From positions 124,001 through 188,000 of IMG/VR virus record IMGVR_UViG_3300042502_001233: 64,000 bases of DNA. The stretch is one strand, 5' to 3'. Each line of letters starts with the position of its first letter. Positions within the stretch are counted from its first letter, which is position 1. Below are positions 19,681 through 63,457 of this stretch, in pieces. The notes beneath the pieces were generated by a model that ran no database searches, had not been told where the DNA came from, and saw nothing but the letters and a program-made list of their open reading frames with translations. Both the position numbers and the translations under genes were made by a program.

Positions 19681-21111
19681 ATGAATAAAAAAGAAAAATT
19701 TATAAATAAAGCAATAATTAAATTTGGTGATAAATTTAATTATGAAGAAATTGATTATATTGATTCTACAAAAAAAATAAAAATAAAATGTAATAAACAT
19801 GACTTATTTTTCTATCAATCCCCGTCTGAACATTTAAGGGGTAAAAATTCTTGTAATGAATGTACTAGAAACCCTAAAGTTAACACAAATTATTTTGTTC
19901 AAAAATCAAAAGAAATTCATGGTGATAAATATGATTATTCATTAACTAACTATATTGATTCATCAACAAAAGTAGATGTTATATGTAAAGAACATGGTGT
20001 TTTTAGTGTATTACCAAATAACCACTACAAACAAAATTGTCCAAAATGTAAAGAAAAAGATAGATATTTAACAACTAAAGATTTTATTGATAAAGCATGT
20101 ACCTTACATAATAAATATGATTATTCTGAAACAGAATATATGAATTCAAAAACTAAAATTAATATAAATTGCAAAGAACATGGTGTTTTTAAACAAATTC
20201 CCAACGACCATTTAAATGGGAAAGGTTGTCCAAAATGTGGTTTAGCTTATAATAAAATGGAAGATGAAATAAAAGAATTTATTAAATCTTTAAACATAAA
20301 TATTATAGAAAATTCAAAACAAATAATATCACCGTTAGAATTAGATATATTTATACCATCACATAATTTAGCTATTGAGTTTGATGGTTTATATTGGCAT
20401 TCTGAAGTTTATAAAGATAAAAATTATCATTTAAAAAAAACTGAACTTTGTCAAAGTAAAAATATTAGGTTAATTCATATATTTGAAGATGAATGGTTAT
20501 CTAAAAAAGAAATAGTTAAATCTAGATTAAAAAATATGTTAGGTTTAACACCAAATAAAATATATGGTAGAAAATGTGTTATAACAAAAGTTACAGCTAA
20601 AGAAACTAAAATATTTTTAGAAAATAATCACATACAAGGTAACGTTAATTCTAAAGTTAGGTTAGGGTTATATTATAATAATGAATTGGTTAGTCTTATG
20701 ACATTTGGCGGGTTAAGAAAAAACCTAGGGAATACATCAAACGAAAATAAATATGAGCTGTTTAGATTTTGTAATTTATCTAATCATATAATAATTGGTG
20801 GTGCAGATAAGTTGCTTAAATATTTTATCAAACATTATAAACCAAAAGAAATAATTAGCTACGCTGACAGAAGATGGTCACAAGGTGATTTATATAATAA
20901 ATTAAATTTTATTTTTTCACATAACACAAAACCAAATTATTTTTATTTGGTTAACGATAAAAGGGAAAATAGATTTAATTATAGAAAAGATATATTGGTC
21001 AAAGAAGGTTTTGATAAAAACAAAACAGAACATGGTATAATGTTAGAAAGAAAATTATATAGAATATATGATTGTGGTAGTATGTGTTTTAAAATTAAAA
21101 TGACCGATTAA
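19681..21111 (+). CDS. Free-standing endonuclease 1 (Zn-ribbon repeats + Vsr/PD-(D/E)XK-like nuclease + GNAT/Mom-like C-terminal domain)
   Basis: Three C..H...H...CPKC repeats; LDIFIP...AIEFDGLYWH; ELFRFC...GGADKL...SYADRRWSQGDLY; antisense to its neighbours. Confidence 0.75.
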   Translation: MNKKEKFINKAIIKFGDKFNYEEIDYIDSTKKIKIKCNKHDLFFYQSPSEHLRGKNSCNECTRNPKVNTNYFVQKSKEIHGDKYDYSLTNYIDSSTKVDVICKEHGVFSVLPNNHYKQNCPKCKEKDRYLTTKDFIDKACTLHNKYDYSETEYMNSKTKININCKEHGVFKQIPNDHLNGKGCPKCGLAYNKMEDEIKEFIKSLNINIIENSKQIISPLELDIFIPSHNLAIEFDGLYWHSEVYKDKNYHLKKTELCQSKNIRLIHIFEDEWLSKKEIVKSRLKNMLGLTPNKIYGRKCVITKVTAKETKIFLENNHIQGNVNSKVRLGLYYNNELVSLMTFGGLRKNLGNTSNENKYELFRFCNLSNHIIIGGADKLLKYFIKHYKPKEIISYADRRWSQGDLYNKLNFIFSHNTKPNYFYLVNDKRENRFNYRKDILVKEGFDKNKTEHGIMLERKLYRIYDCGSMCFKIKMTD

Positions 21112-24524: not shown

Positions 24525-26333
24525 ATGAAAAAAATAAATAAATTTTTAGAAAAATGTAATAATGTACATGGTAATGTATATGATTATTCTTTAGTTAATT
24601 ATATTAATAATAAAACTAAAGTTAAAATAATTTGTTCGATTCATGGTGAATTTGAACAGACACCAGACAAGCATATAAACTCAAAACAAGGATGTCCAAA
24701 ATGTTCGTCAAACTATAAATTAACAAATGAAAATTTTATAACTATATCAAATAAAATCCACAAGAATACTTATAATTATACCAACACAGTTTACTTAAAT
24801 GCAAATTCTGATGTTGATATAATTTGTGAACATCATGGTCTTTTTAAACAAAGACCTAGTGCACATATGTCAGGTCAAGGGTGTCCAAAATGTGCTGGTA
24901 AAAATAAAACCAACAGTGAGGTAGTTAATGAATTTGTTACTGTTCATAAAGATAAATACGATTATTCTTTAGTTAATTATGTTAACCAAAAAACACCATT
25001 AAAAATACTATGTAAAGAACATGGTATTTTTGAACAAACCTATAACACACATAAAAACGGTCACGGGTGTCCAAAATGTGTTGGTAGGAATAAAACAAAC
25101 GAACAATTTATTAAACAAGCAAAAAAAATACACAATAATAAATACAATTATTCGTTGGTTGATTATAATAAATCCAACGATAAAATAAAAATTATATGTC
25201 CAATTCATGGTGAATTTGAACAAAATTCAAACAACCACTTAAATGGAAATGGTTGTCCAAAATGTAAGGGGTTATCAATAATAGAAAAAAAGACAAAGAC
25301 AACTGAACAGTTTATAAGTGAAGCTAAACTTGTTCATGGTGATAAATATGATTATTCTTTAGTTGAATATAAAAATTGTAAAGATTGTATTAAAATTAAA
25401 TGTGTAGAACATGGTGAGTTTGAACAAACACCAGAAATACATTTATCTGGTTGTGGTTGTCAAAAATGTGGTTTTAAATACAATTATAACGAAATCATGA
25501 TAAGCGATTTTATTAAAAGTTTAAATATAAAGACAATTAATAATTCTAGAAAAATAATATCACCACTAGAATTAGATATATTTATACCATCACATAATGT
25601 AGCAATTGAATACAACGGTTTATATTGGCATAGTGAAATAAATAAACCATCTAACTATCATTTAAATAAAACTGAAATGTGTGAAAAACAAGGTATTCAG
25701 TTAATCCATATTTTTGAAGATGAATGGTTATACAAACAAGATATTGTAAAATCTAGACTAAAAAATATATTAGGGTTAACACCCAATAAAATATATGCTA
25801 GAAAATGTGTTATAAAAGAAATAGATATTGAAACATCAAAAAAATTTTTAAATGAAAACCATATTCAAGGTAATGTAAATAGTAGTATTAAAATCGGATT
25901 GTTTTATAATAATGTGTTAGTCAGTTTAATGACATTTGGTAAGGGTAGGATAGCCCTAGGTGGTAATTCAAATCAATTTGAATTGCTTAGATTTTGTAAT
26001 AAATTAGAATCTATCGTTATTGGTGGTGCAGATAAATTACTTAAATATTTTATAAAAACCTATAACCCAAAAGAAATAATTAGTTATGCTGATAGAAGAT
26101 GGAGTCAAGGTGGTTTATACGATAAATTAAACTTTATTAAAACTCATAACTCACAACCAAATTATTGGTATATTAACAATAATCGAAGAGAATATAGATT
26201 TGGTTATAGAAAATCAATACTAGTTAAAAAAGGTTTTAACCCAAATAAAACCGAACACCAAATTATGTTAGATAGAAAAATATACCGAATTTATGATTGC
26301 GGTAATATAGCATACAAAAAAACCCTCTATTAA
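24525..26333 (+). CDS. Free-standing endonuclease 2, paralogue of 19681..21111
   Basis: 602 aa; five Zn-ribbon repeats; the same IISPLELDIFIPSHN and IHIFEDEWL nuclease region and GNAT-like tail. Confidence 0.75.
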   Translation: MKKINKFLEKCNNVHGNVYDYSLVNYINNKTKVKIICSIHGEFEQTPDKHINSKQGCPKCSSNYKLTNENFITISNKIHKNTYNYTNTVYLNANSDVDIICEHHGLFKQRPSAHMSGQGCPKCAGKNKTNSEVVNEFVTVHKDKYDYSLVNYVNQKTPLKILCKEHGIFEQTYNTHKNGHGCPKCVGRNKTNEQFIKQAKKIHNNKYNYSLVDYNKSNDKIKIICPIHGEFEQNSNNHLNGNGCPKCKGLSIIEKKTKTTEQFISEAKLVHGDKYDYSLVEYKNCKDCIKIKCVEHGEFEQTPEIHLSGCGCQKCGFKYNYNEIMISDFIKSLNIKTINNSRKIISPLELDIFIPSHNVAIEYNGLYWHSEINKPSNYHLNKTEMCEKQGIQLIHIFEDEWLYKQDIVKSRLKNILGLTPNKIYARKCVIKEIDIETSKKFLNENHIQGNVNSSIKIGLFYNNVLVSLMTFGKGRIALGGNSNQFELLRFCNKLESIVIGGADKLLKYFIKTYNPKEIISYADRRWSQGGLYDKLNFIKTHNSQPNYWYINNNRREYRFGYRKSILVKKGFNPNKTEHQIMLDRKIYRIYDCGNIAYKKTLY

Positions 26334-55490: not shown

Positions 55491-55988
55491 ATGAAGCTTT
55501 ACAATATCTTTGAAGAAGTTATATTAGAAGAAATCAAGAAAAATTCTCAGTTAATTTCTGAGGGTGTTTCTTCTGATGCGGTTAAAGCTGTTATCAGGGA
55601 TAAAGTAAATGTAAACATACTTTATCAAGATTATGTTGACCAACCACCTAGTAAACGATATATACAAGTATATAATTACGCATCAACTAAAGTAAACAAC
55701 GACTCAATTAGAGCGTATCAAATTAGTGGTGGTTCAAAAACTAAAAAACCAAATAGTTGGAAAATATTTTTGTTAGATAAAATAGTTGGTTGGTATCCAA
55801 CAAACATGAAATGGCAAAACCCTGTATCTGATTATGACGCTAGTATTCCAGCTTATAATCAGTTAGGTGATAGAACAATGAGTCAAGTTTATGATAAAGT
55901 CAACCCAGATACGTTCACAAGACAAAGAAGTGATATCTATCAAAACCCTAACTTAACACAAGATAACGAAGAAGACGAAGAATTTTAA
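55491..55988 (+). CDS. Stand-alone WYL-like domain protein
   Basis: KRYIQVY...SIRAYQ..G.S...WKIFLLDKI pattern. Confidence 0.5.
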   Translation: MKLYNIFEEVILEEIKKNSQLISEGVSSDAVKAVIRDKVNVNILYQDYVDQPPSKRYIQVYNYASTKVNNDSIRAYQISGGSKTKKPNSWKIFLLDKIVGWYPTNMKWQNPVSDYDASIPAYNQLGDRTMSQVYDKVNPDTFTRQRSDIYQNPNLTQDNEEDEEF

Positions 55989-55992
55989 AATT

Positions 55993-56604
55993 ATGGATGT
56001 ACCAAAACCAGTAGACATAGGTGCTTTAAGTGCTTTATTAGGTAAAGCAAAACAAGTAATGAATGTGGTAGAATCTAGAGCTCCAGAAAAAAAACAAGAA
56101 AGAGGTCGAGATTTCGACCCTAGAGACTCATACAATCAATCAATGTTTGATAACGCTCCAATATATAACGAATCTGACGAAAGAGAACCTATTTATGAAA
56201 ATTATCAACAATCAGCACCACAAGGTATTGTTCAAAACCATGACTACACACCAGAACAAATTATGGCGTCAAATTTACCTCCAATAGTAAAAGAAGCGAT
56301 GTTAAAAAACCCAATCCCTAGATTGAGTGGACCACCTTCAAAAGTTAGCGCTGAAGAGATTGCTAGAATAACTGGAGCTAAAATTAGAACACCACAAAAA
56401 CAACAAAGACAAGTTATTTCTGAAGGTATAGTGAGTGATGATATGATAACAATTAGCAAAACTCAATTACAAGATATGATTAATGAATCAATTAACACTT
56501 TTTTTAAACAAACGTACAATAAAACTGTTACAGAAGAAACAATAAAAAAGACAATTAATCTACTAATAAAAGAAGGTAAAATACAAACTAAAAGAAAAAT
56601 ATAA
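55993..56604 (+). CDS. Hypothetical protein
   Basis: 203 aa; LPPIVKEAMLKNPIP; ISE/INE motifs. Confidence 0.6.
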   Translation: MDVPKPVDIGALSALLGKAKQVMNVVESRAPEKKQERGRDFDPRDSYNQSMFDNAPIYNESDEREPIYENYQQSAPQGIVQNHDYTPEQIMASNLPPIVKEAMLKNPIPRLSGPPSKVSAEEIARITGAKIRTPQKQQRQVISEGIVSDDMITISKTQLQDMINESINTFFKQTYNKTVTEETIKKTINLLIKEGKIQTKRKI

Positions 56605-56633
56605 AAAAAAGGGGTTTAATAACCCCTTTTTTA
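56604..56633. terminator. Intrinsic terminator
   Basis: AAAAAAGGGGTT-taat-AACCCCTTTTTT. Confidence 0.75.
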
Positions 56634-56696
56634 TTTACTATTTGTTTTTAAAACGATATATTTAAAAATCAATAAAATGTTTTAAAACAAATTTTC

Positions 56697-56753
56697 ATGA
56701 AAAAATTAAAAGTATTGGTAGTGCCTTCAGACCGTACAGGTGTAAGCTACTTT
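56697..56753 (+). pseudogene. Orphan 5' end of the glycosyltransferase (MKKLKVLVVPSDRTGVSYF)
   Basis: Hand translation; the frame runs on into the cassette and stops at 56819. Confidence 0.85.
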
Positions 56754-56796
56754 GACTTTTTTTATGTTTTTCTATATATTTATAATAAAATAACTT

Positions 56797-57693
56797 ATGG
56801 AAAAAGAAACAGAAAATAAAATTATTAACCTTTATTTAAGTGGGGTAGGTTCGACAACAATAATAAAGTTAATCCCAAACATAACAAAAAAAAATGTTTT
56901 GAAATTATTAAAAGAAAAAAACATATTAAGAAATCGATTATTAGGTGACGAATTTTATAAAGATTATTGGTTTGATGGTGAATATTGGTGTGGGTTATGG
57001 GTTTGTGAATCATGTAATAATAAAATTAATTTTTCAGTTAAAGAAAAAAGTTTATTAAATAGAAATTTAAAAAGAAAAAAAATATGTAAAAAATGTTCAC
57101 TAGAAAATCAAATAGGTGAAAATAACCCATTTTTTAATAAAAAACATTCAATTGAATCAATAATTAAAATATCAAAAAGTAAAATTGGTATAACAACTAG
57201 CGACCATATGAGTAAATCTGAATATAGAAAAATGTTTAGTGACATGGCTAAAGAACGTTGGGGTAATGGTAGTATGGAAGAAACAAGAATTAAATTAAGT
57301 AATCTAATGAAAGAAAGAATTTCATCAGGTTTATTAAAAAGTTATAATAGGTCTAAAGCAGAAGATGAATTAATATTAACATTAGAAACTAAAAATATTT
57401 TAGTCGAACCAAATTATCTATTAGAAGGTAAAATATTTGATTTATATATACCTAAATTTAATTTATTAATTGAATATAATGGAGATTATTGGCATTGTAA
57501 CCCACAAAAATACGAATCTAATTATTTAAACACTAAAAAAAATAAAACAGCTAAAGAAATTTGGGAGTATGATGCTAAAAAACTTTACTTAGCCAAAAAA
57601 AATCACTATAATTGTGAAGTAATTTGGGAAACAGATTACAAAAAAAATAAAAACATAATATTAAACATATTAAAAAAATATGAAACAAACTAA
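56797..57693 (+). CDS. Free-standing endonuclease 4 (HTH + Zn finger + NUMOD3 + Vsr/DUF559-like nuclease)
   Basis: CESC...CKKC; GENNPFFNKKHS; RSKAE...FDLYIP...IEYNGDYWH; VIWE. Confidence 0.8.
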   Translation: MEKETENKIINLYLSGVGSTTIIKLIPNITKKNVLKLLKEKNILRNRLLGDEFYKDYWFDGEYWCGLWVCESCNNKINFSVKEKSLLNRNLKRKKICKKCSLENQIGENNPFFNKKHSIESIIKISKSKIGITTSDHMSKSEYRKMFSDMAKERWGNGSMEETRIKLSNLMKERISSGLLKSYNRSKAEDELILTLETKNILVEPNYLLEGKIFDLYIPKFNLLIEYNGDYWHCNPQKYESNYLNTKKNKTAKEIWEYDAKKLYLAKKNHYNCEVIWETDYKKNKNIILNILKKYETN

Positions 57694-60077
57694 TTTAAAC
57701 ATCACCCCAGTTAGTCGAAAAATCAAGGTATTAGTAGTACCTAGCGACAGGACTGGGGTGAGCTGAAAGCTACTTCCGTTCAACAAACCCACACATCGCA
57801 TTAGAAAACAATTACCCAGATGAGTTTTCAGTAGATATTGATTATGAACCACAATTAAATAACGATGAGTGGTTAAAACAATATGATATCATTCATTACC
57901 ATAGAACACTTGGTAGTTACGAACAAATGCCACAATTATTACAACATCTAGATAATTTAGGTATAATCACCATTATGGATTTAGATGACCATTGGGCTCC
58001 AGGCCCACACCACCCAGCATATCACATTATTAAATCTTCTGGGTTAGATAAAAAGATATTAGACAACATTAAGTGCGCTAGAAACGTAACAACAACAACA
58101 CGTTTATTTGCAGAAGAAATAGCTAAACACAATAAAAATGTTTTTGTTCTTCCAAACGCAGTTGAACCAACTGAGAAACAATTTACTCCAAACTTAGAAA
58201 AATCTGATAGAATTAGAATTGGATGGTTAGGTGGTTCGTGTATGACACCAGATACTGAAATTCTAACCGATGAAGGTTGGAAACGATTTGATGAATTGGA
58301 CCAAACAGAATTGGTTGCAACGTTAAACCCAAAAACAAATCAAATGGAATATCATAAACCAGTTGGGTATATATGTGAACCGTTTGATGGTGAATTGAAT
58401 TGTGCTAAAAATGGTTTAATTGAATATGAAGTTACACCAAACCATAATATGTATGCTTCTGTTGCTAAATCATTGACACATAAAAAATTAAATCTAGAAT
58501 TAATTCAATCTGAAAAAATACATGGTAAAAATTTTCATGTTAAAAAAGATGCTATTTGGATGGGTGAAGAAAAAGAGTTCTTTATTTTACCAATGTTAAA
58601 CGAATATCATGAAATTGAGGAAAATGAAAATTTTATTGATAGGTTAATATCTAAAAAACGCTATAATGGGTTATCTGGAAAATATAGTTCAGATAAATTT
58701 ATAGATATGGATAAGTGGTTAGAATTTTTCGGTTTTTGGTTAGCTGAAGGTTGGACTAGTAAAACAAAAGGATTACATCAAGTTGGTATTGCTCAATCAA
58801 AAGATAATAATTATTTATCACATATGTATGATTTATTAATTGAAATTGGGTTCAAACCAACATATACTAAAGATAAAAAACAAATTAGAGTTTTTGATAA
58901 ACAACTATGGGAATATTTATCAAATTTTGGAGATGCTTACGATAAATTTGTACCAAAAGAAGTTTTAGAGTTATCTAGAAGACAATTAACTATTTTTTTA
59001 GAATGGTTTATTAAAGGTGATGGTCATATTGAAAAAAATAAATATAATAGAACTAGAGCGTTTACATGCTCACCTTCATTAGCTAATAATTTACAAGAAA
59101 TTGCATTAAAAATAGGTATATCAGCAACTATAACAAATAGGGGTAAACGAACATCAGAAATTAAAGGTAGAGCTATTAATAATCAATATGATTCGTTAGT
59201 TGTTAATTTTACTAAACACCCTAGCGTTAGTAAACATAATAAAAACACGCCATTAGTTAAAAGTGAAGACCAATATAATAGATACTATAAAGGTAACGTG
59301 TATTGTGTTGAAGTTAAAAACCATATCATTTATGTAAGGAGAAATGGTAAAGCGATGTGGATTGGTAACTCACACTTGAAAGATTTGGAGATTCTTAATG
59401 GCGTTGTCACTAAATTAAGAACTGATGGATTGATTGACAAAGTTCAATTTGTTTTGTGTGGTTTTGATACAAGAGGTACACACACAGAAATTGACCAAGC
59501 AACTGGTGAGCAAAAAGTAAGACAAATTACACCTATGGAAAGTGTTTGGTTTAGATATGAAAAAATATTTACAGACAACTATCAAATCGTTAGTCCAGAG
59601 TATAAATCTCATCTTATGAAATTTACGTTGGATGAATTCCCAAATGTTGCTAACGAACCGTATCGCAGAGTTTGGACAAAACCAATATCAACCTACGCGT
59701 CAAACTATAATTTATTTGACATCTCTTTGGCACCGTTAGAAGAAAATATATTTAACAAAGTTAAAAGTCAGTTAAAAGTTATCGAAGCTGGTTTCCACCA
59801 TAAAGCTATCATTGCTCAAGACTTTGGACCATATAAAATTGATTTAAAGAACGCGATTCAATATGGTGGTGGTTTTGATGAAACAGCTAACGGTATCCTT
59901 ATTGATTCTAAAAAGAATCACAAAGATTGGTATACTTCGTTGAAAAAATTAATAACAAACCCTAATATGATTCCAATCCTTCAAGAAAATCTTTATAACA
60001 CTGTTAAAGACACATATTCAATGAACAAAGTAACTGAGGATAGAAAAGAATTATATTTAAAATTAACACAAAAATAA
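57680..60077 (+). CDS. GT-B (GT4-like) glycosyltransferase with intein; 5' part interrupted by a 7-nt out-of-frame insert with TGA at 57764
   Basis: KVLVVPSDRTGVS*|SYFRSTNPH...DLDDHW...NVTTTT...VLPNA...RIGWLGGS|SHLKDL...DISLAPL...FNKVKSQLKVIEAG; frame open from 57762. Confidence 0.75.
57702..57761 (+). other. GC-rich stem-loop within the recoded gene start
   Basis: TCACCCCAGT/ACTGGGGTGA outer stem; GTCG/CGAC and AGGTA/TACCT inner stems. Confidence 0.7.
58239..59369 (+). mobile_element. LAGLIDADG intein in the glycosyltransferase (377 aa)
   Basis: Starts CMTPDTEILTDEGWK, ends WIGN, +1 residue Ser; FFGFWLAEG and WFIKGDG motifs. Confidence 0.9.
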
Positions 60078-60565: not shown

Positions 60566-61117
60566 ATGTCTTTAACACAAGAAAAAATCCTTGCTAACAC
60601 AAAAAAATATTTTGAGACAGCAAAAAATAATGATTTCATGACTGACGAACTTATGACTTTCTTAGGTGAAAGTTTTATAAAAGCTCCAGCATCAACAATG
60701 GATTCTTTACATAACGCTTTTGAAGGTGGTCTAATTGACCATTTATTAAGAGTTGCGTTTTACGCTGTAAGATTCAATAACTCATTACCAGACGATAAAA
60801 AAGTAGACCAAAAAAGTCTTCTTAAAGTTTGTCTGTTGCACCAAATAGGTAAAGCTAATCTCTATGTTGACGGTCCAGAGTGGGCTAAGAAAAACGGTAA
60901 ACATTACGACTTTAACAACGCGTTGGTTTCAATGAGAGTTAGTGAAAGAAGTATTTACTACGCAACATCTAACGGAGTTACTTTCACAGAAGAAGAGTTT
61001 GGTGCTATTCTTATGTCAGATAAATCAGATGACAAACAAGCGGAATACCACAATTCAGTATTGGGTGATTTGTTAAAAATAGCTAACTTATTTGCAATTA
61101 AACACGAGAAAAACTAA
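60566..61117 (+). CDS. HD-superfamily protein with variant HQ motif
   Basis: APAS...HNAFEGGLIDH...CLLHQIGK. Confidence 0.7.
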   Translation: MSLTQEKILANTKKYFETAKNNDFMTDELMTFLGESFIKAPASTMDSLHNAFEGGLIDHLLRVAFYAVRFNNSLPDDKKVDQKSLLKVCLLHQIGKANLYVDGPEWAKKNGKHYDFNNALVSMRVSERSIYYATSNGVTFTEEEFGAILMSDKSDDKQAEYHNSVLGDLLKIANLFAIKHEKN

Positions 61118-61698
61118 TGAATTACAACGTTGAAGAAATGAGAAAGAAGTTATTAGAAACTTTTGATTCTAATAGCGGTTATACCATGGATGATTTTAAC
61201 AAAGAATTCGGCGGTCAAGCACCTTTAACTATTGCTGAGCAATTCAAATTCAAGGTTAATTTTAAAAACGAATCAACAAACCCAGACCCAGAGTATGCAA
61301 CTGCTGGGTCTTCTGGTTTTGATTTAAGAGCTAATCTAGTAGACGGTCCTATGAAATTATATACTGGTGAAAGAGCTATGGTCCCAACTGGTTTATTTTT
61401 TGAATTACCAGAAAACTTTGAGATTCAAGTTAGACCTAGAAGTGGATTGGCTGCTAAGAATGGTGTTACGGTTTTGAATACACCTGGAACGGTTGATGCT
61501 GATTATCGCGGTGAAATTAAAGTTATCTTAATTAATTTAGGTGAACAACCATTTGAAATATTTCATGGTGATAGAATCGCCCAAGCAGTTGTTGCTAGTG
61601 TAACAGCTAAAAACATTATTAACTTAAATAGAGTTACTGAAATATCAGAAAACACTGAACGTGGTTCTGGTGGGTTTGGTAGTTCGGGGGTTAAATAA
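61117..61698 (+). CDS. dut: Trimeric dUTPase
   Basis: GSSGFDL, RPRSGLA, GTVDADYRGEI, DRIAQ, RGSGGFGSSG. Confidence 0.95.
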   Translation: MNYNVEEMRKKLLETFDSNSGYTMDDFNKEFGGQAPLTIAEQFKFKVNFKNESTNPDPEYATAGSSGFDLRANLVDGPMKLYTGERAMVPTGLFFELPENFEIQVRPRSGLAAKNGVTVLNTPGTVDADYRGEIKVILINLGEQPFEIFHGDRIAQAVVASVTAKNIINLNRVTEISENTERGSGGFGSSGVK

Positions 61699-61804: not shown

Positions 61805-63457
61805 ATGATTACAATAGGTTATTGTACTAGAATTAGTAACCCAAATTTTGGTAAACATTTAATAAAAACGTGTGGTTTAGGTAATAAAAAAGTTGAAATT
61901 ATTGAAATAGTTAATACTGGTAATAGGTCATTAACTGAATGTTATAATGAAATTTTAAATAAGGCGAAATATAATTATGTAGTGTTTACACATTCTGATT
62001 TAACTATTGACACAAAACAATGGGGTAATAAATTGGTTAAACTATTCGAAAAAAATCCTGAATATGGTATCATCGGTGTTGCTGGTAGCAAAAACATGCC
62101 AGAGTCTGGTCAATGGTGGGAAAATAGAAGTAAAATGTATGGTCGCGTTCAACACACGCACGAAGGCAAAACTTGGTTATCAAGTTATTCTGAGGACTTA
62201 GGTCAAGAACTTGAAGAAATTGTTGTTTGTGATGGTGTTTGGTTTTCTGTTGATAAAAGAAGATTGAAAAAAGAATTTAACGAAGAAGTTGAAGGGTTTC
62301 ATTTTTATGATGTAACCTTTGCTTTTGAAAATTACCTACAAGGTGTTAAAGTTGGTGTAACAACTGCTATTAGAATCAATCACCAATCTATCGGTATGAC
62401 CAACGAAGCGTGGGAAAAAAACAGAGCCGATTTCGCTGAAGCTTTTCAAGCATTCTTACCAGCAAACGTAAAGAAAACACTTCGAAAAGGGCAAAAACTT
62501 AAAGTACTTATTGGTTGTTTAAGTTTTTCAAATTATACTGGTTCTGAGTTATATGTTTTTGAATTGGCAAAACAATTAATCAAACAAGGTTGTGAGGTTT
62601 CTGTGTGTTCTAGTATCGGAGAACCTTTGTTATCTGCGGCAAATAAACTAGGGGTTAAAATGTATAGTATACAAGAACCACCTGGGTTTAAGTTAGGTGA
62701 TGGTAAATGGATGTTAAAATCACCACAAGGTGATGTAGTCTCACAACCAAACACATTGTACAAAGTACAAGATGTTAATTTTGATGTGATTCACTTAAAC
62801 CACAAACCAGTTACGGAACATTTATTGAGATTCTATCCAGAAACACCAGTAATTTGTTCTATACATTCAGAAGTAATATCTTTGGAGGAGCCAGTTATTT
62901 CACCTCAAATAAAACAATACATCGCCATTAGACCAGAGATTAAAAAACACATTGTGGATACTTTTGGTGTTGATAAAGATTTGGTTAGTGTTATTTATAA
63001 CCCAATTGATGCTGATAAATTTAAAGTAGTTAACACAACTGAAAAACGAAATAAAAAAAGAATACTTTTTGTTGGTACCATTGATTATCTTAGAAGAAAC
63101 ACAATTCAAGATTTGATAAATGTTACTCGAGAAAACAACCAAGAACTTTGGATTCTTGGGAAGAAAAACGATACGTATTTAGATGAGATAATAACCAACG
63201 AACCACATGTAACATATCATGAACCTACATCTAATGTTGAAAAATTCATTCACCAATGTGATGAAACCGCTGGGATACTTTTAGGTAGAACAACTATTGA
63301 AGGTTGGATGTGTGGAAAATCTGGTTGGATTTACAATGTTGATTCTACTGGGGTTATATTGTCAAAAGCATTACATGAAGTACCTACAGACGTCGATAAA
63401 TTCAACAGCAAAAACATAACAACCCAAATAATTGAAGAATATAAAAAAATATTATAA
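61805..63457 (+). CDS. Two-domain glycosyltransferase (GT2-like + GT4-like)
   Basis: YVVFTHSD, GIIGVAG, FHFYDVTF in the N-terminal part; TGSELYV..L, YNPID, GRTTIEG in the C-terminal part. Confidence 0.75.
   Translation: MITIGYCTRISNPNFGKHLIKTCGLGNKKVEIIEIVNTGNRSLTECYNEILNKAKYNYVVFTHSDLTIDTKQWGNKLVKLFEKNPEYGIIGVAGSKNMPESGQWWENRSKMYGRVQHTHEGKTWLSSYSEDLGQELEEIVVCDGVWFSVDKRRLKKEFNEEVEGFHFYDVTFAFENYLQGVKVGVTTAIRINHQSIGMTNEAWEKNRADFAEAFQAFLPANVKKTLRKGQKLKVLIGCLSFSNYTGSELYVFELAKQLIKQGCEVSVCSSIGEPLLSAANKLGVKMYSIQEPPGFKLGDGKWMLKSPQGDVVSQPNTLYKVQDVNFDVIHLNHKPVTEHLLRFYPETPVICSIHSEVISLEEPVISPQIKQYIAIRPEIKKHIVDTFGVDKDLVSVIYNPIDADKFKVVNTTEKRNKKRILFVGTIDYLRRNTIQDLINVTRENNQELWILGKKNDTYLDEIITNEPHVTYHEPTSNVEKFIHQCDETAGILLGRTTIEGWMCGKSGWIYNVDSTGVILSKALHEVPTDVDKFNSKNITTQIIEEYKKIL

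What the first reader, a model, noticed from the sequence alone, without database searches (positions are those of the whole stretch)
57702..57761. GC-rich hairpin built from the extra N-terminal codons of the replacement gene start
In a very AT-rich genome, the added residues (NITPVSR) provide the 5' arm of a multi-stem hairpin. Its 3' arm is made of the recoded codons ACT GGG GTG. The ancestral copy cannot form this structure, so the recoding may be selected for structure as well as immunity. Possible roles are a recoding stimulator, a regulatory RNA element or an ssDNA recognition hairpin at the cassette end.
Basis: partly seen in the sequence, partly recalled or inferred. Interest (0 to 1): 0.62.

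Follow-up and report, generated by a model that had tools for sequence, protein, structure and literature searches.

The report
Hairpin driving a ribosome hop
The GC-rich hairpin is real and evolutionarily conserved. It ends exactly where a homing-endonuclease cassette has broken a phage glycosyltransferase gene with a stop codon and a 6-13-base gap, so it most likely helps ribosomes hop the gap; this would be a second, unrelated natural case of the translational bypassing known from phage T4 gene 60.

Summary
**Observation confirmed.**
- Window 57702-57761 folds into a three-tier hairpin of -28.5 kcal/mol (z = -6.8).
- None of 2000 synonymous recodings is as stable.
- The same 60 nt of cassette-free genes fold at about -6 kcal/mol.

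**Context.**
- A ~1 kb mobile cassette sits in the start of a GT-B glycosyltransferase gene of a 362 kb lake jumbo phage. It carries a homing endonuclease (HEG) and a recoded, N-terminally extended gene start.
- The new 28-codon start ends in AGC TGA. The conserved body resumes 7 nt later, at a second AGC, in another frame.

**Comparative evidence.**
- I found 27 distinct cassette junctions in metagenomes. Of these, 23 distinct 60-nt stretches were folded and all form the hairpin.
- Every junction has a stop right after the take-off codon.
- The take-off-to-landing step is 6, 7, 8, 9, 10 or 13 nt, so all three frames occur.
- The landing codon matches the take-off codon in at least 2 of 3 positions.
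- The downstream ORF is intact in all but one.
- The hairpin covaries: 97.6% of cells paired, 6 pairs changed on both sides, 0 of 500 shuffles as good.
- It never occurs without the gap.

**Best reading.**
- This is a programmed short translational hop. The hairpin re-zips behind the ribosome and drives it forward; the gap gives immunity to the HEG.
- No protein-level proof exists.

**Verdict.** New variant of a known kind; high interest.

The parts
56697..56752 (+). Old (resident) start of the glycosyltransferase gene: codons 1-18 plus 2 nt of codon 19 (M-K-K-L-K-V-L-V-V-P-S-D-R-T-G-V-S-Y-F). It then runs into cassette DNA and stops at 56819.
   Evidence: It is identical to the uninterrupted allele L001 up to 56752. 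Five other loci keep an old copy; four of them (L089, L133, L141, L186) are cut at the same point, L183 one base earlier.
56744..56752 (+). Left copy of the 9-nt direct repeat AAGCTACTT that flanks the insertion. The right copy is at 57767-57775, 1023 nt away.
56753..56796 (+). Left end of the cassette and AT-rich leader of the endonuclease gene. It begins T-GAC-TTTTT; the same GAY-TT(T/A)-TT start follows the old copy in four other loci (window, L089, L133, L141, L186).
56797..57693 (+). Homing endonuclease gene, 298 aa, with a NUMOD3 DNA-binding motif. It belongs to phage homing-endonuclease PHROGs, and its DNA is similar to 'Hef-like' endonucleases of Campylobacter phages.
   Evidence: Copies 39-68% identical lie directly upstream of the hairpin in many related loci; elsewhere they are decayed or absent.
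57680..57763 (+). Replacement gene start: ATG plus 27 codons (M-K-Q-T-N-L-N-I-T-P-V-S-R-K-I-K-V-L-V-V-P-S-D-R-T-G-V-S). That is 11 added residues followed by a recoded copy of codons 2-17. It overlaps the end of the endonuclease gene.
   Evidence: In the copies read by eye the length is 28 codons and the amino acids are kept while the codons differ.
57702..57761 (+). The hairpin of the finding, with three stacked stems. Its last base is the first base of the take-off codon.
57761..57763 (+). Proposed take-off codon AGC (Ser).
   Evidence: The genome's only serine tRNA has anticodon GCU, which reads AGY.
57764..57767 (+). Coding gap: TGA stop plus one spacer base (A).
   Evidence: A stop follows the take-off codon in 27 of 27 distinct cassette junctions, always TGA or TAA and never TAG.
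57768..57770 (+). Proposed landing codon AGC, 7 nt after the take-off codon and in the +1 frame.
57771..58238 (+). Gene body resumes (Y-F-R-S-T-N-P-H...). This is the rest of the N-extein of a GT-B (GT4-like) glycosyltransferase.
58239..59369 (+). Intein of 377 aa with a LAGLIDADG endonuclease domain, inserted after G-W-L-G-G-S. It is a second, separate mobile element in the same gene.
   Evidence: It is absent from L001 and from many relatives.
59370..60077 (+). C-extein of the glycosyltransferase, through to the stop codon.

Best explanation
**What it is.**
- The hairpin is the 5' stimulator, or 'driver stem-loop', of a programmed short translational bypass (ribosome hop).
- A mobile cassette has entered codon 19 of a conserved phage glycosyltransferase gene. 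The cassette carries a homing endonuclease gene, a new ATG, 11 extra codons, a recoded copy of codons 2-17, a stop codon and 0-7 spacer bases.

**How it would work.**
- Ribosomes start at the new ATG (57680) and read 28 codons.
- They pause with peptidyl-tRNA-Ser on AGC (57761-63) and UGA in the A site.
- At that moment the 3' arm of the 11-bp GC-rich outer stem lies inside the mRNA exit path. The 5' arm and the inner stems are already outside and folded.
- Zipping of the outer stem yields about -21 kcal/mol, or 2-3.5 kcal/mol per base. This pulls the mRNA through the ribosome.
- The tRNA lets go and re-pairs with the next matching codon (AGC at 57768-70).
- Reading resumes at TAC. The product has the native G-V-S-Y-F-R junction with no inserted residue.

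**Why the gap exists (DNA level).** It separates the recoded left half of the endonuclease's presumed target from the native right half. The carrier is then immune without paying for an insertion in an invariant protein segment.

**Shown.**
- The structure and its covariation.
- The split reading frames.
- The stop and the matched codons.
- Variable gap lengths.
- Intact downstream genes.
- Empty-site alleles.
- Decay of the endonuclease while hairpin and gap are retained.

**Inferred.**
- That ribosomes hop at all.
- That the hairpin drives the hop.
- That the gap confers immunity.
For: **1. The gene is split.**
- The uninterrupted allele L001 is 96% identical in the flank and reads straight through ...G-V-S-Y-F-R-S. 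About 43 of 48 related loci do the same.
- In the window the new start ends in AGC TGA. The body continues 7 nt later in the +1 frame, with no start codon before 57927.

**2. 27 distinct cassette junctions share one design.**
- A stop follows the take-off codon in 27 of 27.
- The take-off-to-landing step is 6, 7, 8, 9, 10 or 13 nt. All three frame relations occur, so no single frameshift or readthrough explains them.
- Close relatives differ by one base in the gap, 7 against 8 nt.
- The landing codon can be read by the same tRNA in 15 of 27: AGC/AGC, AGC/AGT, AGT/AGC, GGC/GGT, GGT/GGC and GGT/GGT.
- In the other 12 it matches in 2 of 3 positions.
- A hop restores the native protein length in every case.

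**3. The landing codon is not just the resident codon.**
- In L089 and L133 the retained old copy has TCA or TCT at this position, while the landing codon is GGC or AGC.
- TCN serine codons make up 11 of 32 intact or old copies. They are 0 of 27 take-off codons and 0 of 27 landing codons.

**4. The body is kept functional.**
- The ORF after the landing codon is complete and of normal length in all cassette loci with enough sequence, except L149.
- dN/dS has a median of 0.20.
- The junction lies in an invariant stretch, L7-V16 and R20-T22, at the beta1-loop-alpha1 element of a GT-B fold.

**5. Hairpin and gap always go together.**
- Cassette copies fold at -21 to -36 kcal/mol; copies without a gap fold at -2 to -11.
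- Scans that fixed only the stem returned only gapped genes in this gene context. Every cassette junction recovered by the scan that fixed only the codons and the stop, and folded, carries the stem.
- The stem's 3' end lies 0-2 nt from the take-off codon's first base.

**6. Covariation.**, with examples. It includes the pair formed by the first base of the take-off codon: U-A becomes C-G when AGC becomes GGC.

**7. The element outlives the endonuclease.** The endonuclease is full-length in about 12 loci, split or truncated in about 8, and absent in more than 15. Hairpin and gap are kept throughout.

**8. Energetics.**

**9. The sequence is real, and the gap is still there in contigs assembled from RNA libraries.**

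**10. Literature.**
- Pairing of mRNA leaving the ribosome is proposed to drive forward bypassing in T4 gene 60 (bioRxiv 10.1101/2024.12.09.627546).
- A refolding upstream hairpin beside the shift site stimulates forward (+1) shifts on 70S ribosomes (PMC6321510, PMC3639245).
- The gene 60 gap travels with a homing endonuclease and protects against it (bioRxiv 10.1101/2022.08.31.505936).

**11. Uniqueness in the genome.** In a scan of the whole 362 kb genome for this signature, this site scores best.
Against: - There is no protein, ribosome-profiling or reporter evidence. Hopping and its efficiency are inferred.
- 12 of 27 landing codons are only near-cognate: AGA or GGA at the third position, and GGC for a Ser-tRNA through a first-position U.G pair.
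- The sequences are related, so the counts are not independent events. Part of the codon match could be inherited from a duplicated codon.
- The retrieval patterns fixed either the outer stem or the stop. Cassettes that differ in both would have been missed.
- dN/dS partly reflects divergence that predates cassette entry.
- Any hairpin refolds behind a ribosome. That this one supplies the driving force is a physical argument, not a measurement.
- The sense strand is only modestly more stable than the antisense strand (-29.7 against -27.4 kcal/mol).
- The RNA-library contigs may contain DNA, and contigs drop rare variants.
- One cassette locus, L149, has a body ORF of only 100 codons.
Confidence: 0.6

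Rival explanations
1. Ribosomes do hop the gap, but the hairpin serves another RNA function. It could stabilise or process the mRNA, set the rate of translation, or couple expression of the endonuclease to that of the glycosyltransferase. The hop would then rely on the stop codon, the matched codons and the nascent peptide alone.
For: - Synthetic stop-hops need only matched codons flanking a slow codon (review PMC5009743).
- In gene 60 homologues the 5' stem-loop is poorly conserved (bioRxiv 10.1101/2022.08.31.505936).
- The new ATG overlaps the end of the endonuclease gene, so some coupling is plausible.
Against: - The hairpin and the gap co-occur perfectly.
- The stem's 3' end is fixed at 0-2 nt from the take-off codon.
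- Its closing pair covaries with the take-off codon's first base.
- It persists where the endonuclease is gone.
- It has no U-tract, so it is not a terminator.
Confidence: 0.15
2. There is no hop. Each gap length is decoded by a different standard event stimulated by the hairpin: a +1 frameshift for 7, 10 and 13 nt, a -1 frameshift for 8 nt, and stop-codon readthrough for 6 and 9 nt. The products would carry 1-3 extra residues.
For: - Upstream refolding hairpins stimulate +1 frameshifting on 70S ribosomes (PMC6321510).
- A stop in the A site is the classic +1 trigger.
Against: - Three mechanisms would have to alternate among close relatives that differ by one gap base.
- Upstream hairpins attenuate -1 shifts, yet the 8-nt class is common.
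- AGC cannot re-pair one base forward.
- In the window the +1 frame has a stop just upstream, at 57759-61, which leaves a single codon for the shift.
- The insertions would fall in an invariant segment with no length variation in the 17 homologues aligned in A2.
Confidence: 0.07
3. The element acts on DNA. The inverted repeat would form a cruciform or single-strand hairpin that marks the cassette end for the endonuclease or for recombination, or that blocks cleavage.
For: - The repeat lies at the right end of a mobile cassette.
- The antisense strand also folds well, at -27.4 kcal/mol on average.
Against: - Conserved G.U pairs, such as columns 30/36, would be A-C mismatches on the other strand.
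- The sense strand is more stable in 23 of 26.
- The element is retained in more than 15 loci without an endonuclease.
- Its exact register with the take-off codon has no DNA-level rationale.
Confidence: 0.05
4. Cassette-bearing glycosyltransferase genes are dead. The cassette is a selfish insertion, and the hairpin and gap have no decoding role.
For: - The frame is broken.
- One locus, L149, has a short body ORF.
- The phage carries another glycosyltransferase next door, at 61805-63457.
Against: - More than 20 distinct cassette alleles keep a full-length body ORF. Among them the endonucleases are only 39-68% identical to the window's.
- dN/dS is about 0.2.
- The recoded 17 codons keep their amino acids while the codons change.
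- Landing codons are never TCN.
Confidence: 0.05
5. The region from the old start to the body is a self-splicing intron with the hairpin as one of its stems. Splicing would join 56752 to the body.
For: The window has an old exon-like start, an endonuclease ORF and a structured 3' end.
Against: - There is no Rfam intron match even at E = 10.
- Only about 44 nt and about 75 nt of non-ORF sequence are available, and the 5' part is AT-rich and unstructured.
- No U/G splice-site pattern fits.
- Most cassette loci have no old start at all.
- A translated, recoded copy of the first exon makes no sense inside an intron.
- RNA-library contigs run unspliced across the region.
Confidence: 0.02

Closest known systems
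Phage T4 gene 60 translational bypass with its MobA homing-endonuclease cassette
   Same: - A conserved gene is interrupted by a mobile endonuclease cassette that adds an N-terminal extension and a non-coding gap.
- The take-off codon is followed at once by a stop.
- A matched landing codon sits at the end of the gap.
- An mRNA stem-loop lies 5' of the take-off codon.
- The gap is proposed to protect the carrier from its own endonuclease.
- The endonuclease decays while the gap is kept.

Source: bioRxiv 10.1101/2022.08.31.505936.
   Different: - It is not homologous. The target gene is a glycosyltransferase rather than topoisomerase. The endonuclease carries a NUMOD3 motif and resembles 'Hef-like' ones, rather than MobA.
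- The gap is 6-13 nt rather than 50.
- There is no stable take-off stem-loop in the gap, and no Shine-Dalgarno-like site in the gap.
- Take-off is at codon 28 rather than 46.
- The 5' hairpin is large (-21 to -36 kcal/mol), strictly conserved and covarying. In gene 60 homologues the 5' stem-loop is weak and not conserved.
Synthetic 'stop-hops' and hops over hungry codons in E. coli
   Same: Peptidyl-tRNA leaves a codon next to a slow A-site codon and re-pairs a few bases downstream at a matched codon. Nine nucleotides then specify one amino acid (PMC5009743). The 6-nt-step class here (GGT TAA GGT) has exactly this design.
   Different: - The synthetic cases are unprogrammed and of low efficiency.
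- The review says that no natural in-frame stop-hop is known.
- Here the design is natural, conserved, linked to a dedicated hairpin, and spans 6-13 nt in any frame.
Bypass elements ('byps') of Magnusiomyces capitatus mitochondria
   Same: - Mobile inserts break conserved genes and are skipped in translation.
- Take-off and landing triplets are matched or near-matched, with 2-of-3 pairing tolerated.
   Different: - Byps are 27-55 nt GC-cluster inserts at 81 sites.
- They depend on a special mitochondrial translation system and an unused codon.
- They are said to be independent of mRNA context, and no homing endonuclease is involved.
Refolding upstream hairpins that regulate frameshifting
   Same: A stable hairpin whose 3' end abuts the recoding site re-forms at the mRNA exit. 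It favours forward movement (+1) and opposes backward movement (-1). This has been shown on 70S and 80S ribosomes (PMC3639245, PMC6321510).
   Different: Those are single-base shifts in engineered reporters or viral attenuators. Here the proposed displacement is 6-13 nt with loss of codon-anticodon pairing.
Free-standing homing endonucleases with intronless homing that split genes and add new tails (MobE in nrdA)
   Same: An endonuclease gene inserted in or beside a conserved gene spreads to empty alleles and brings compensating sequence.
   Different: In those cases the split products assemble as two proteins. Here the 5' part of the gene is duplicated in recoded form, and the two parts must be joined during translation.

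Membership tests
Programmed translational bypassing (functional class) | One conserved protein is encoded by two ORF segments separated by untranslated bases. | tested here: met
   - Uninterrupted homologues read ...T-G-V-S-Y-F-R-S....
- Cassette alleles are split there by a stop plus 0-7 nt, in all three frame relations.
Programmed translational bypassing (functional class) | [quoted passage not shown] | tested here: met
   - 15 of 27 pairs can be read by one tRNA, and 12 of 27 match in 2 of 3 positions.
- No TCN serine codons occur, although they are 11 of 32 in intact or old copies.
- The landing codon differs from the resident codon in L089, L133 and L141.

Programmed translational bypassing (functional class) | A slow-to-decode A-site codon immediately 3' of the take-off codon. 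| tested here: met
   A stop codon (TGA or TAA) in 27 of 27.
Programmed translational bypassing (functional class) | A single polypeptide spanning the gap is demonstrated. | not testable with these tools
   This needs mass spectrometry of a reporter or of the native protein.
T4 gene 60 / MobA bypass cassette (homologous family) | Insertion in the topoisomerase II large-subunit gene, with a gap of about 50 nt and a MobA-type endonuclease. | tested here: not met
   - The host gene is a GT-B glycosyltransferase.
- The gap is 6-13 nt.
- The endonuclease has a NUMOD3 motif and resembles 'Hef-like' ones.
T4 gene 60 / MobA bypass cassette (homologous family) | A take-off stem-loop with the take-off codon in its 5' side, able to form in the A site. 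| tested here: not met
   Only a marginal 4-bp AGCU...AGCU helix can form across the gap, worth about 1 kcal/mol. It is absent from the GGT TAA GGT class.
T4 gene 60 / MobA bypass cassette (homologous family) | A nascent-peptide signal in the exit tunnel. | not testable with these tools
   The nascent chain read by eye in several copies is 28 residues and carries a basic R-K-x-K/R motif 13-16 residues from the take-off codon. Its role is unknown.
Homing-endonuclease mobile cassette | An endonuclease ORF beside its presumed target, empty-site alleles in close relatives, and a disrupted target in carriers. | tested here: met
   - L001 is the empty site, at 96% identity.
- The left junction is the same in five of the six loci that keep the old start (window, L089, L133, L141, L186); L183 is cut one base earlier.
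- The endonuclease lies directly upstream in many loci.
- Cleavage itself was not tested.
Group I intron | A conserved catalytic core (P3-P9) and splice sites after U and after a terminal G. | tested here: not met
   There is no Rfam match at E <= 10. The non-ORF flanks are too short, and no fitting splice sites exist.
Intrinsic transcription terminator | A GC-rich hairpin followed by a run of U. | tested here: not met
   The hairpin is followed by GCUGAAAGCUAC. A true terminator-like hairpin with a U-run lies upstream, at about 56609-56636.
prfB-type +1 programmed frameshift | A P-site codon that can re-pair one base forward next to a stop, with a fixed +1 outcome. | tested here: not met
   AGC or GGY cannot re-pair at +1. 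The gaps give the 0, +1 and -1 frames.

The most novel reading that the evidence does not exclude
- This is the first natural family of short-range programmed ribosome hops (6-13 nt, in any frame).
- It arose independently of T4 gene 60 but has the same evolutionary logic: a homing endonuclease buys immunity with an untranslated gap.
- A single large, covarying 5' hairpin acts as the motor, by zipping up at the mRNA exit.
- It would supply the natural, minimal test system for the 'exiting-mRNA pairing drives bypassing' model. It would also show that bypass cassettes are a recurrent solution for endonucleases that invade conserved coding sequence.
Probability: 0.55. Interest if true: 0.9.

Novelty: new variant of a known kind. 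Interest (0 to 1): 0.85.

Why it matters
- Programmed translational bypassing in phages rests on one case, T4 gene 60, and its homologues. A 2022 survey states that the cassette 'remains unique'.
- A 2016 review says that shorter-distance counterparts with matched codons have 'long been presumed', and that no natural stop-hop is known.
- This locus offers such a counterpart, with 27 natural junction variants that already sample gap length, codon pair and stem sequence.
- The signal is short, about 90 nt, and the hairpin sits exactly where the contested 'driver' of forward movement should act. The mechanism therefore becomes directly testable with simple reporters.
- It shows a second route by which a homing endonuclease can invade an invariant protein segment without an intron or intein.
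- It warns annotators that short 'broken' gene starts beside endonuclease genes in phage metagenomes may be functional.

Tried and rejected
- **Rfam scan** of 55500-59000 at E <= 10 found no intron or other RNA family, only chance sRNA hits.
- **Group I intron reading**: rejected. See the rival explanations.
- **Phage GenBank search**: only an 80-nt stretch of the endonuclease resembles Campylobacter phage 'Hef-like' endonucleases. No annotated relative of the cassette was found.
- **Pfam** on the endonuclease C-terminus and on the intact glycosyltransferase gave nothing above threshold. The fold was therefore assigned from a model of the natural uninterrupted homologue.
- **PDB sequence search** with the endonuclease gave only a weak NUMOD3-type match to the I-TevI DNA-binding domain.
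- **Assembly error**: rejected by two independent assemblies and by 27 distinct variants.
- **Alternative genetic code**: not invoked. The frames differ, and both TGA and TAA occur.
- **Re-initiation after the stop**: rejected. There is no ATG, GTG or TTG between the gap and 57927.
- **Genome-wide scan** for the same signature found no second convincing case in this phage.
- **Jumbo-phage paper PMC12619734** gave no firm placement of this phage.
- **Literature searches** found no description of this element.
- **Not constructed**: the hop-joined protein and the intein-spliced protein were never built or submitted as sequences. The parts were searched by reference only.
Full report
**1. The observation.**

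Window 57702-57761 folds as RNA into three stacked stems with an MFE of -28.5 kcal/mol (z = -6.84 against dinucleotide shuffles).
- The outer stem has 11 bp, the middle stem 4 bp and the inner stem 7 bp.
Of 2000 synonymous recodings of the same 22 codons drawn with the phage's own codon usage, none reaches -28.5 (mean -10.0, sd 3.3). With uniform codon choice, none of 2000 does either.
- The corresponding 60 nt of the retained ancestral copy fold at -4.2.
- The window is about 30% G+C, while the hairpin stretches average 48% G+C.

**2. What surrounds it.**

The window belongs to a 362 kb tailed jumbo phage found in lake-water metagenomes from several studies.
- A glycosyltransferase gene starts normally at 56697 (M-K-K-L-K-V-L-V-V-P-S-D-R-T-G-V-S-Y-F). 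After the second base of codon 19 it runs into foreign, AT-rich DNA.
- A 298-aa homing endonuclease gene follows at 56797-57693. It has a NUMOD3 motif and matches phage homing-endonuclease PHROGs.
- Overlapping its end, a new ATG at 57680 opens a 28-codon frame. It holds 11 new residues and then a recoded copy of residues 2-17 of the glycosyltransferase. It ends AGC TGA at 57761-57766.
- The conserved body (Y-F-R-S-T-N-P-H...) continues from 57771, preceded by a second AGC at 57768-57770. That is 7 nt downstream of the first AGC and in the +1 frame.
- The body has no start codon before 57927.
- It also carries a 377-aa LAGLIDADG intein at 58239-59369.
- A near-identical contig, L001 (96% identity in the flank), has the uninterrupted and intein-free gene. 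It defines the insertion as 1023 nt flanked by the 9-nt repeat AAGCTACTT.

**3. Relatives.**

A protein-guided scan of viral contigs returned 48 loci. About 43 of them have the ordinary start, and three (L006, L025, L030) have the cassette.
- Pattern scans added many more cassette loci. One pattern fixed only the outer stem. Another fixed only codon positions 1-2 of P-S-D-R-T-G-V plus a stop.
- In total there are 27 distinct cassette junctions.
- All have the take-off codon followed immediately by TGA or TAA, then 0-7 further bases, then a landing codon and the conserved body.
- The step from take-off to landing is:
  - 6 nt (GGT TAA GGC, or GGT TAA GGT);
  - 7 nt;
  - 8 nt;
  - 9 nt;
  - 10 nt (GGC TGA ATTA GGT);
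  - 13 nt (GGC TGA plus 7 nt, then GGA).
- The body therefore lies in the 0, +1 or -1 frame in different phages.
- Relatives that are 81-90% identical around the site differ by one gap base.
- The codon pairs are AGC/AGC, AGC/AGT, AGT/AGC, GGC/GGT, GGT/GGC and GGT/GGT in 15 cases, AGC/AGA and GGC/GGA in 4, and AGY/GGC in 8.
- Only a hop of the peptidyl-tRNA from the first codon to the second gives the native, invariant protein length in every case.

**4. Is the codon match more than a duplicated codon?**

Six distinct loci keep the old gene start upstream of the endonuclease: the window, L183, L186, L089, L133 and L141. In five of them the left junction is at the same point; in L183 it lies one base earlier.
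- In L089 and L133 the old copy has TCA or TCT serine at this position. The landing codon is GGC or AGC. In L141 the pair is AGC against AGA.
- The landing codon therefore travels with the cassette.
- TCN codons make up 11 of 32 intact or old copies, but none of 27 take-off codons and none of 27 landing codons.
- The phage's only serine tRNA has anticodon GCU, which reads AGY.
- These counts come from related sequences, so they are suggestive rather than independent.

**5. Is the interrupted gene alive?**

- In every cassette locus with enough downstream sequence, bar one (L149), the ORF after the landing codon is complete. It is 387-408 codons long, or 756-781 with an insert.
- dN/dS over the first 150 codons has a median of 0.20. 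Some of that divergence may predate the cassette.
- The recoded 17 codons keep their amino acids while the codons vary.
- The junction lies inside the most conserved stretch of the protein, with L7-V16 and R20-T22 invariant in 17 homologues.
- A model of the natural uninterrupted homologue puts it at the beta1-loop-alpha1 element of a GT-B fold. The nearest solved structures are GT4 enzymes such as BshA, PglA, MshA and PimA. Insertions there are unlikely to be tolerated.

**6. The hairpin across relatives.**

- All 23 distinct cassette stretches fold into the same design, at -21 to -36 kcal/mol. All 31 distinct intact or old copies fold at -2 to -11. Hairpin and gap are never found apart.
- On 20 same-register sequences (16 distinct), 97.6% of cells are paired and 6 pairs change on both sides. 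None of 500 shuffles reaches any measure, and slid controls drop to 30-50% paired.
- Examples of compensation:
  - The closing pair U-A becomes C-G when the take-off codon changes from AGC to GGC.
  - Pair 2 occurs as C-G, G-C, U-A and A-U.
  - Pair 11 occurs as C-G, U-A, A-U and U.G.
  - The middle stem changes from G-C to A-U.
  - The inner stem changes from G-C to C-G in L006, at the price of V to L and P to A in the protein.
- A second family (L185, L188, L189, L191, L193, L198) has a different outer stem, ACUCCGG pairing with CCGGAGU, shifted by 3 nt. Its extension reads T-P-D-V-R-R.
- Glycine and valine codons are GGG/GGA and mostly GTG in cassettes, against GGT and GTT/GTA in ordinary genes.
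- Conserved G.U pairs, and the greater stability of the sense strand in 23 of 26 sequences, point to RNA.

**7. The endonuclease.**

- Copies 39-68% identical lie directly upstream of the hairpin in about 12 loci.
- They are split or truncated in about 8 loci and absent in more than 15. Hairpin and gap remain throughout.
- The function of the hairpin and gap is therefore tied to expression of the glycosyltransferase, not to mobility.

**8. Reads.**

- Two independent lake assemblies reproduce 57476-57855 and 57610-57816 without a single difference.
- Contigs from two RNA libraries come from a strain about 92% identical. They run from the endonuclease gene through hairpin and gap into the body with no insertion or deletion in 57700-57800. 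Their two changes inside the hairpin strengthen stems.
- These contigs lack the intein.
- Contigs cannot prove transcription or exclude rare RNA forms.

**9. Mechanism (inferred).**

- With AGC in the P site and UGA in the A site, the 3' arm of the outer stem (57751-57761) lies within the roughly 12 nt that the ribosome covers upstream of the P site. The 5' arm and the inner stems are already free.
- Folding with the last 13 nt withheld gives about -8 kcal/mol. Release gains about -21 kcal/mol, at 2-3.5 kcal/mol per base emerging.
- Zipping would drag the mRNA forward by up to the length of the arm, which matches the observed 6-13 nt steps.
- This is the 'driver' role proposed for pairing of exiting mRNA in gene 60 (bioRxiv 10.1101/2024.12.09.627546). 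It also agrees with experiments in which a refolding upstream hairpin beside the shift site promotes forward shifts and opposes backward shifts on 70S ribosomes (PMC6321510, PMC3639245).
- At the DNA level, the gap would separate the recoded left half of the endonuclease target from its native right half. This gives immunity without a protein insertion. The same logic has been shown for MobA and gene 60 (bioRxiv 10.1101/2022.08.31.505936). Cleavage was not tested here.

**10. Comparison and novelty.**

- The element works like the T4 gene 60 / MobA cassette but is not a member of that family. The gene, the endonuclease and the gap size differ. It has no take-off stem-loop, and its 5' hairpin is far stronger and conserved.
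- The literature held here reports no second phage bypass family and no natural stop-hop.
- I rate it a new variant of a known kind.

**11. Limits and conduct.**

- Everything rests on sequence comparison. No protein evidence exists.
- The retrieval patterns bias the sample.
- No other genetic code was invoked.
- The hop-joined product and the intein-spliced product were not assembled or submitted. The parts were searched by reference, and the fold came from a natural uninterrupted homologue.

Noticed in passing
window 58239-59369: A 377-aa LAGLIDADG intein sits in the same glycosyltransferase gene, after G-W-L-G-G-S. It is present in some cassette and non-cassette alleles and absent from L001, from many relatives and from the RNA-library contigs. 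The gene has therefore been invaded by two unrelated mobile elements.
   Followed up: partly
window 57761-57771: Take-off AGC plus the U of the stop, and landing AGC plus the U of the next codon, form a self-complementary AGCU-N3-5-AGCU mini-helix across the gap in the AGC-type cassettes. It is worth about 1 kcal/mol. It may bring the two codons together, or it may be a by-product of the palindromic AGCU.
   Followed up: partly
window 56697-56819: The retained old gene start keeps its promoter region and ATG. It now encodes a 40-aa ORF that overlaps the endonuclease start at 56797, so the endonuclease may be expressed from the glycosyltransferase's own signals.
   Followed up: no
window 19681-21111 and 24525-26333: Two large HNH-type homing endonuclease genes (PHROG 559/3339, E down to 1e-164) lie in the lowest-GC stretches of the window (about 26% G+C).
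   Followed up: no
genome G000:C1 44350-44423 and 5320-5393 (outside the window): Among 45 phage tRNA genes are one with anticodon CUA (amber-suppressor-like) and one predicted with a four-base anticodon. None of the 27 cassette junctions uses TAG as its stop.
   Followed up: no
genome G000:C1 about 228149, minus strand (outside the window): One runner-up in the genome-wide signature scan (three others score slightly better) has the longest downstream ORF: CCA TGA plus 5 nt plus CCA, followed by a 576-codon open frame, with an upstream 60-mer of -21.8 kcal/mol. It is probably an ordinary gene junction.
   Followed up: no
L149 (cassette at about 2155) and L098 (cassette at about 3702): In L149 the body ORF after the landing codon is only 100 codons, so it may be a dead copy or carry a further interruption. 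In L098 the ORF is 764 codons without the usual intein site, so it may carry a different insert or be a fusion.
   Followed up: no
window 56606-56636: A terminator-like hairpin (GGGGTTTAATAACCCC followed by a T-run) ends the upstream gene, just before the old glycosyltransferase promoter region.
   Followed up: no
window 61805-63457: A second glycosyltransferase, a GT2-like domain fused to a GT4-like domain (550 aa), lies two genes downstream, next to a dUTPase-like ORF at 61117-61698.
   Followed up: no
window gene starts, e.g. 56690-56700, 56790-56800 and 57670-57682: Start codons are preceded by A/T-rich leaders with no Shine-Dalgarno-like purine run. This hints at a host with SD-independent initiation, such as Bacteroidota. 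The host was not determined.
   Followed up: no
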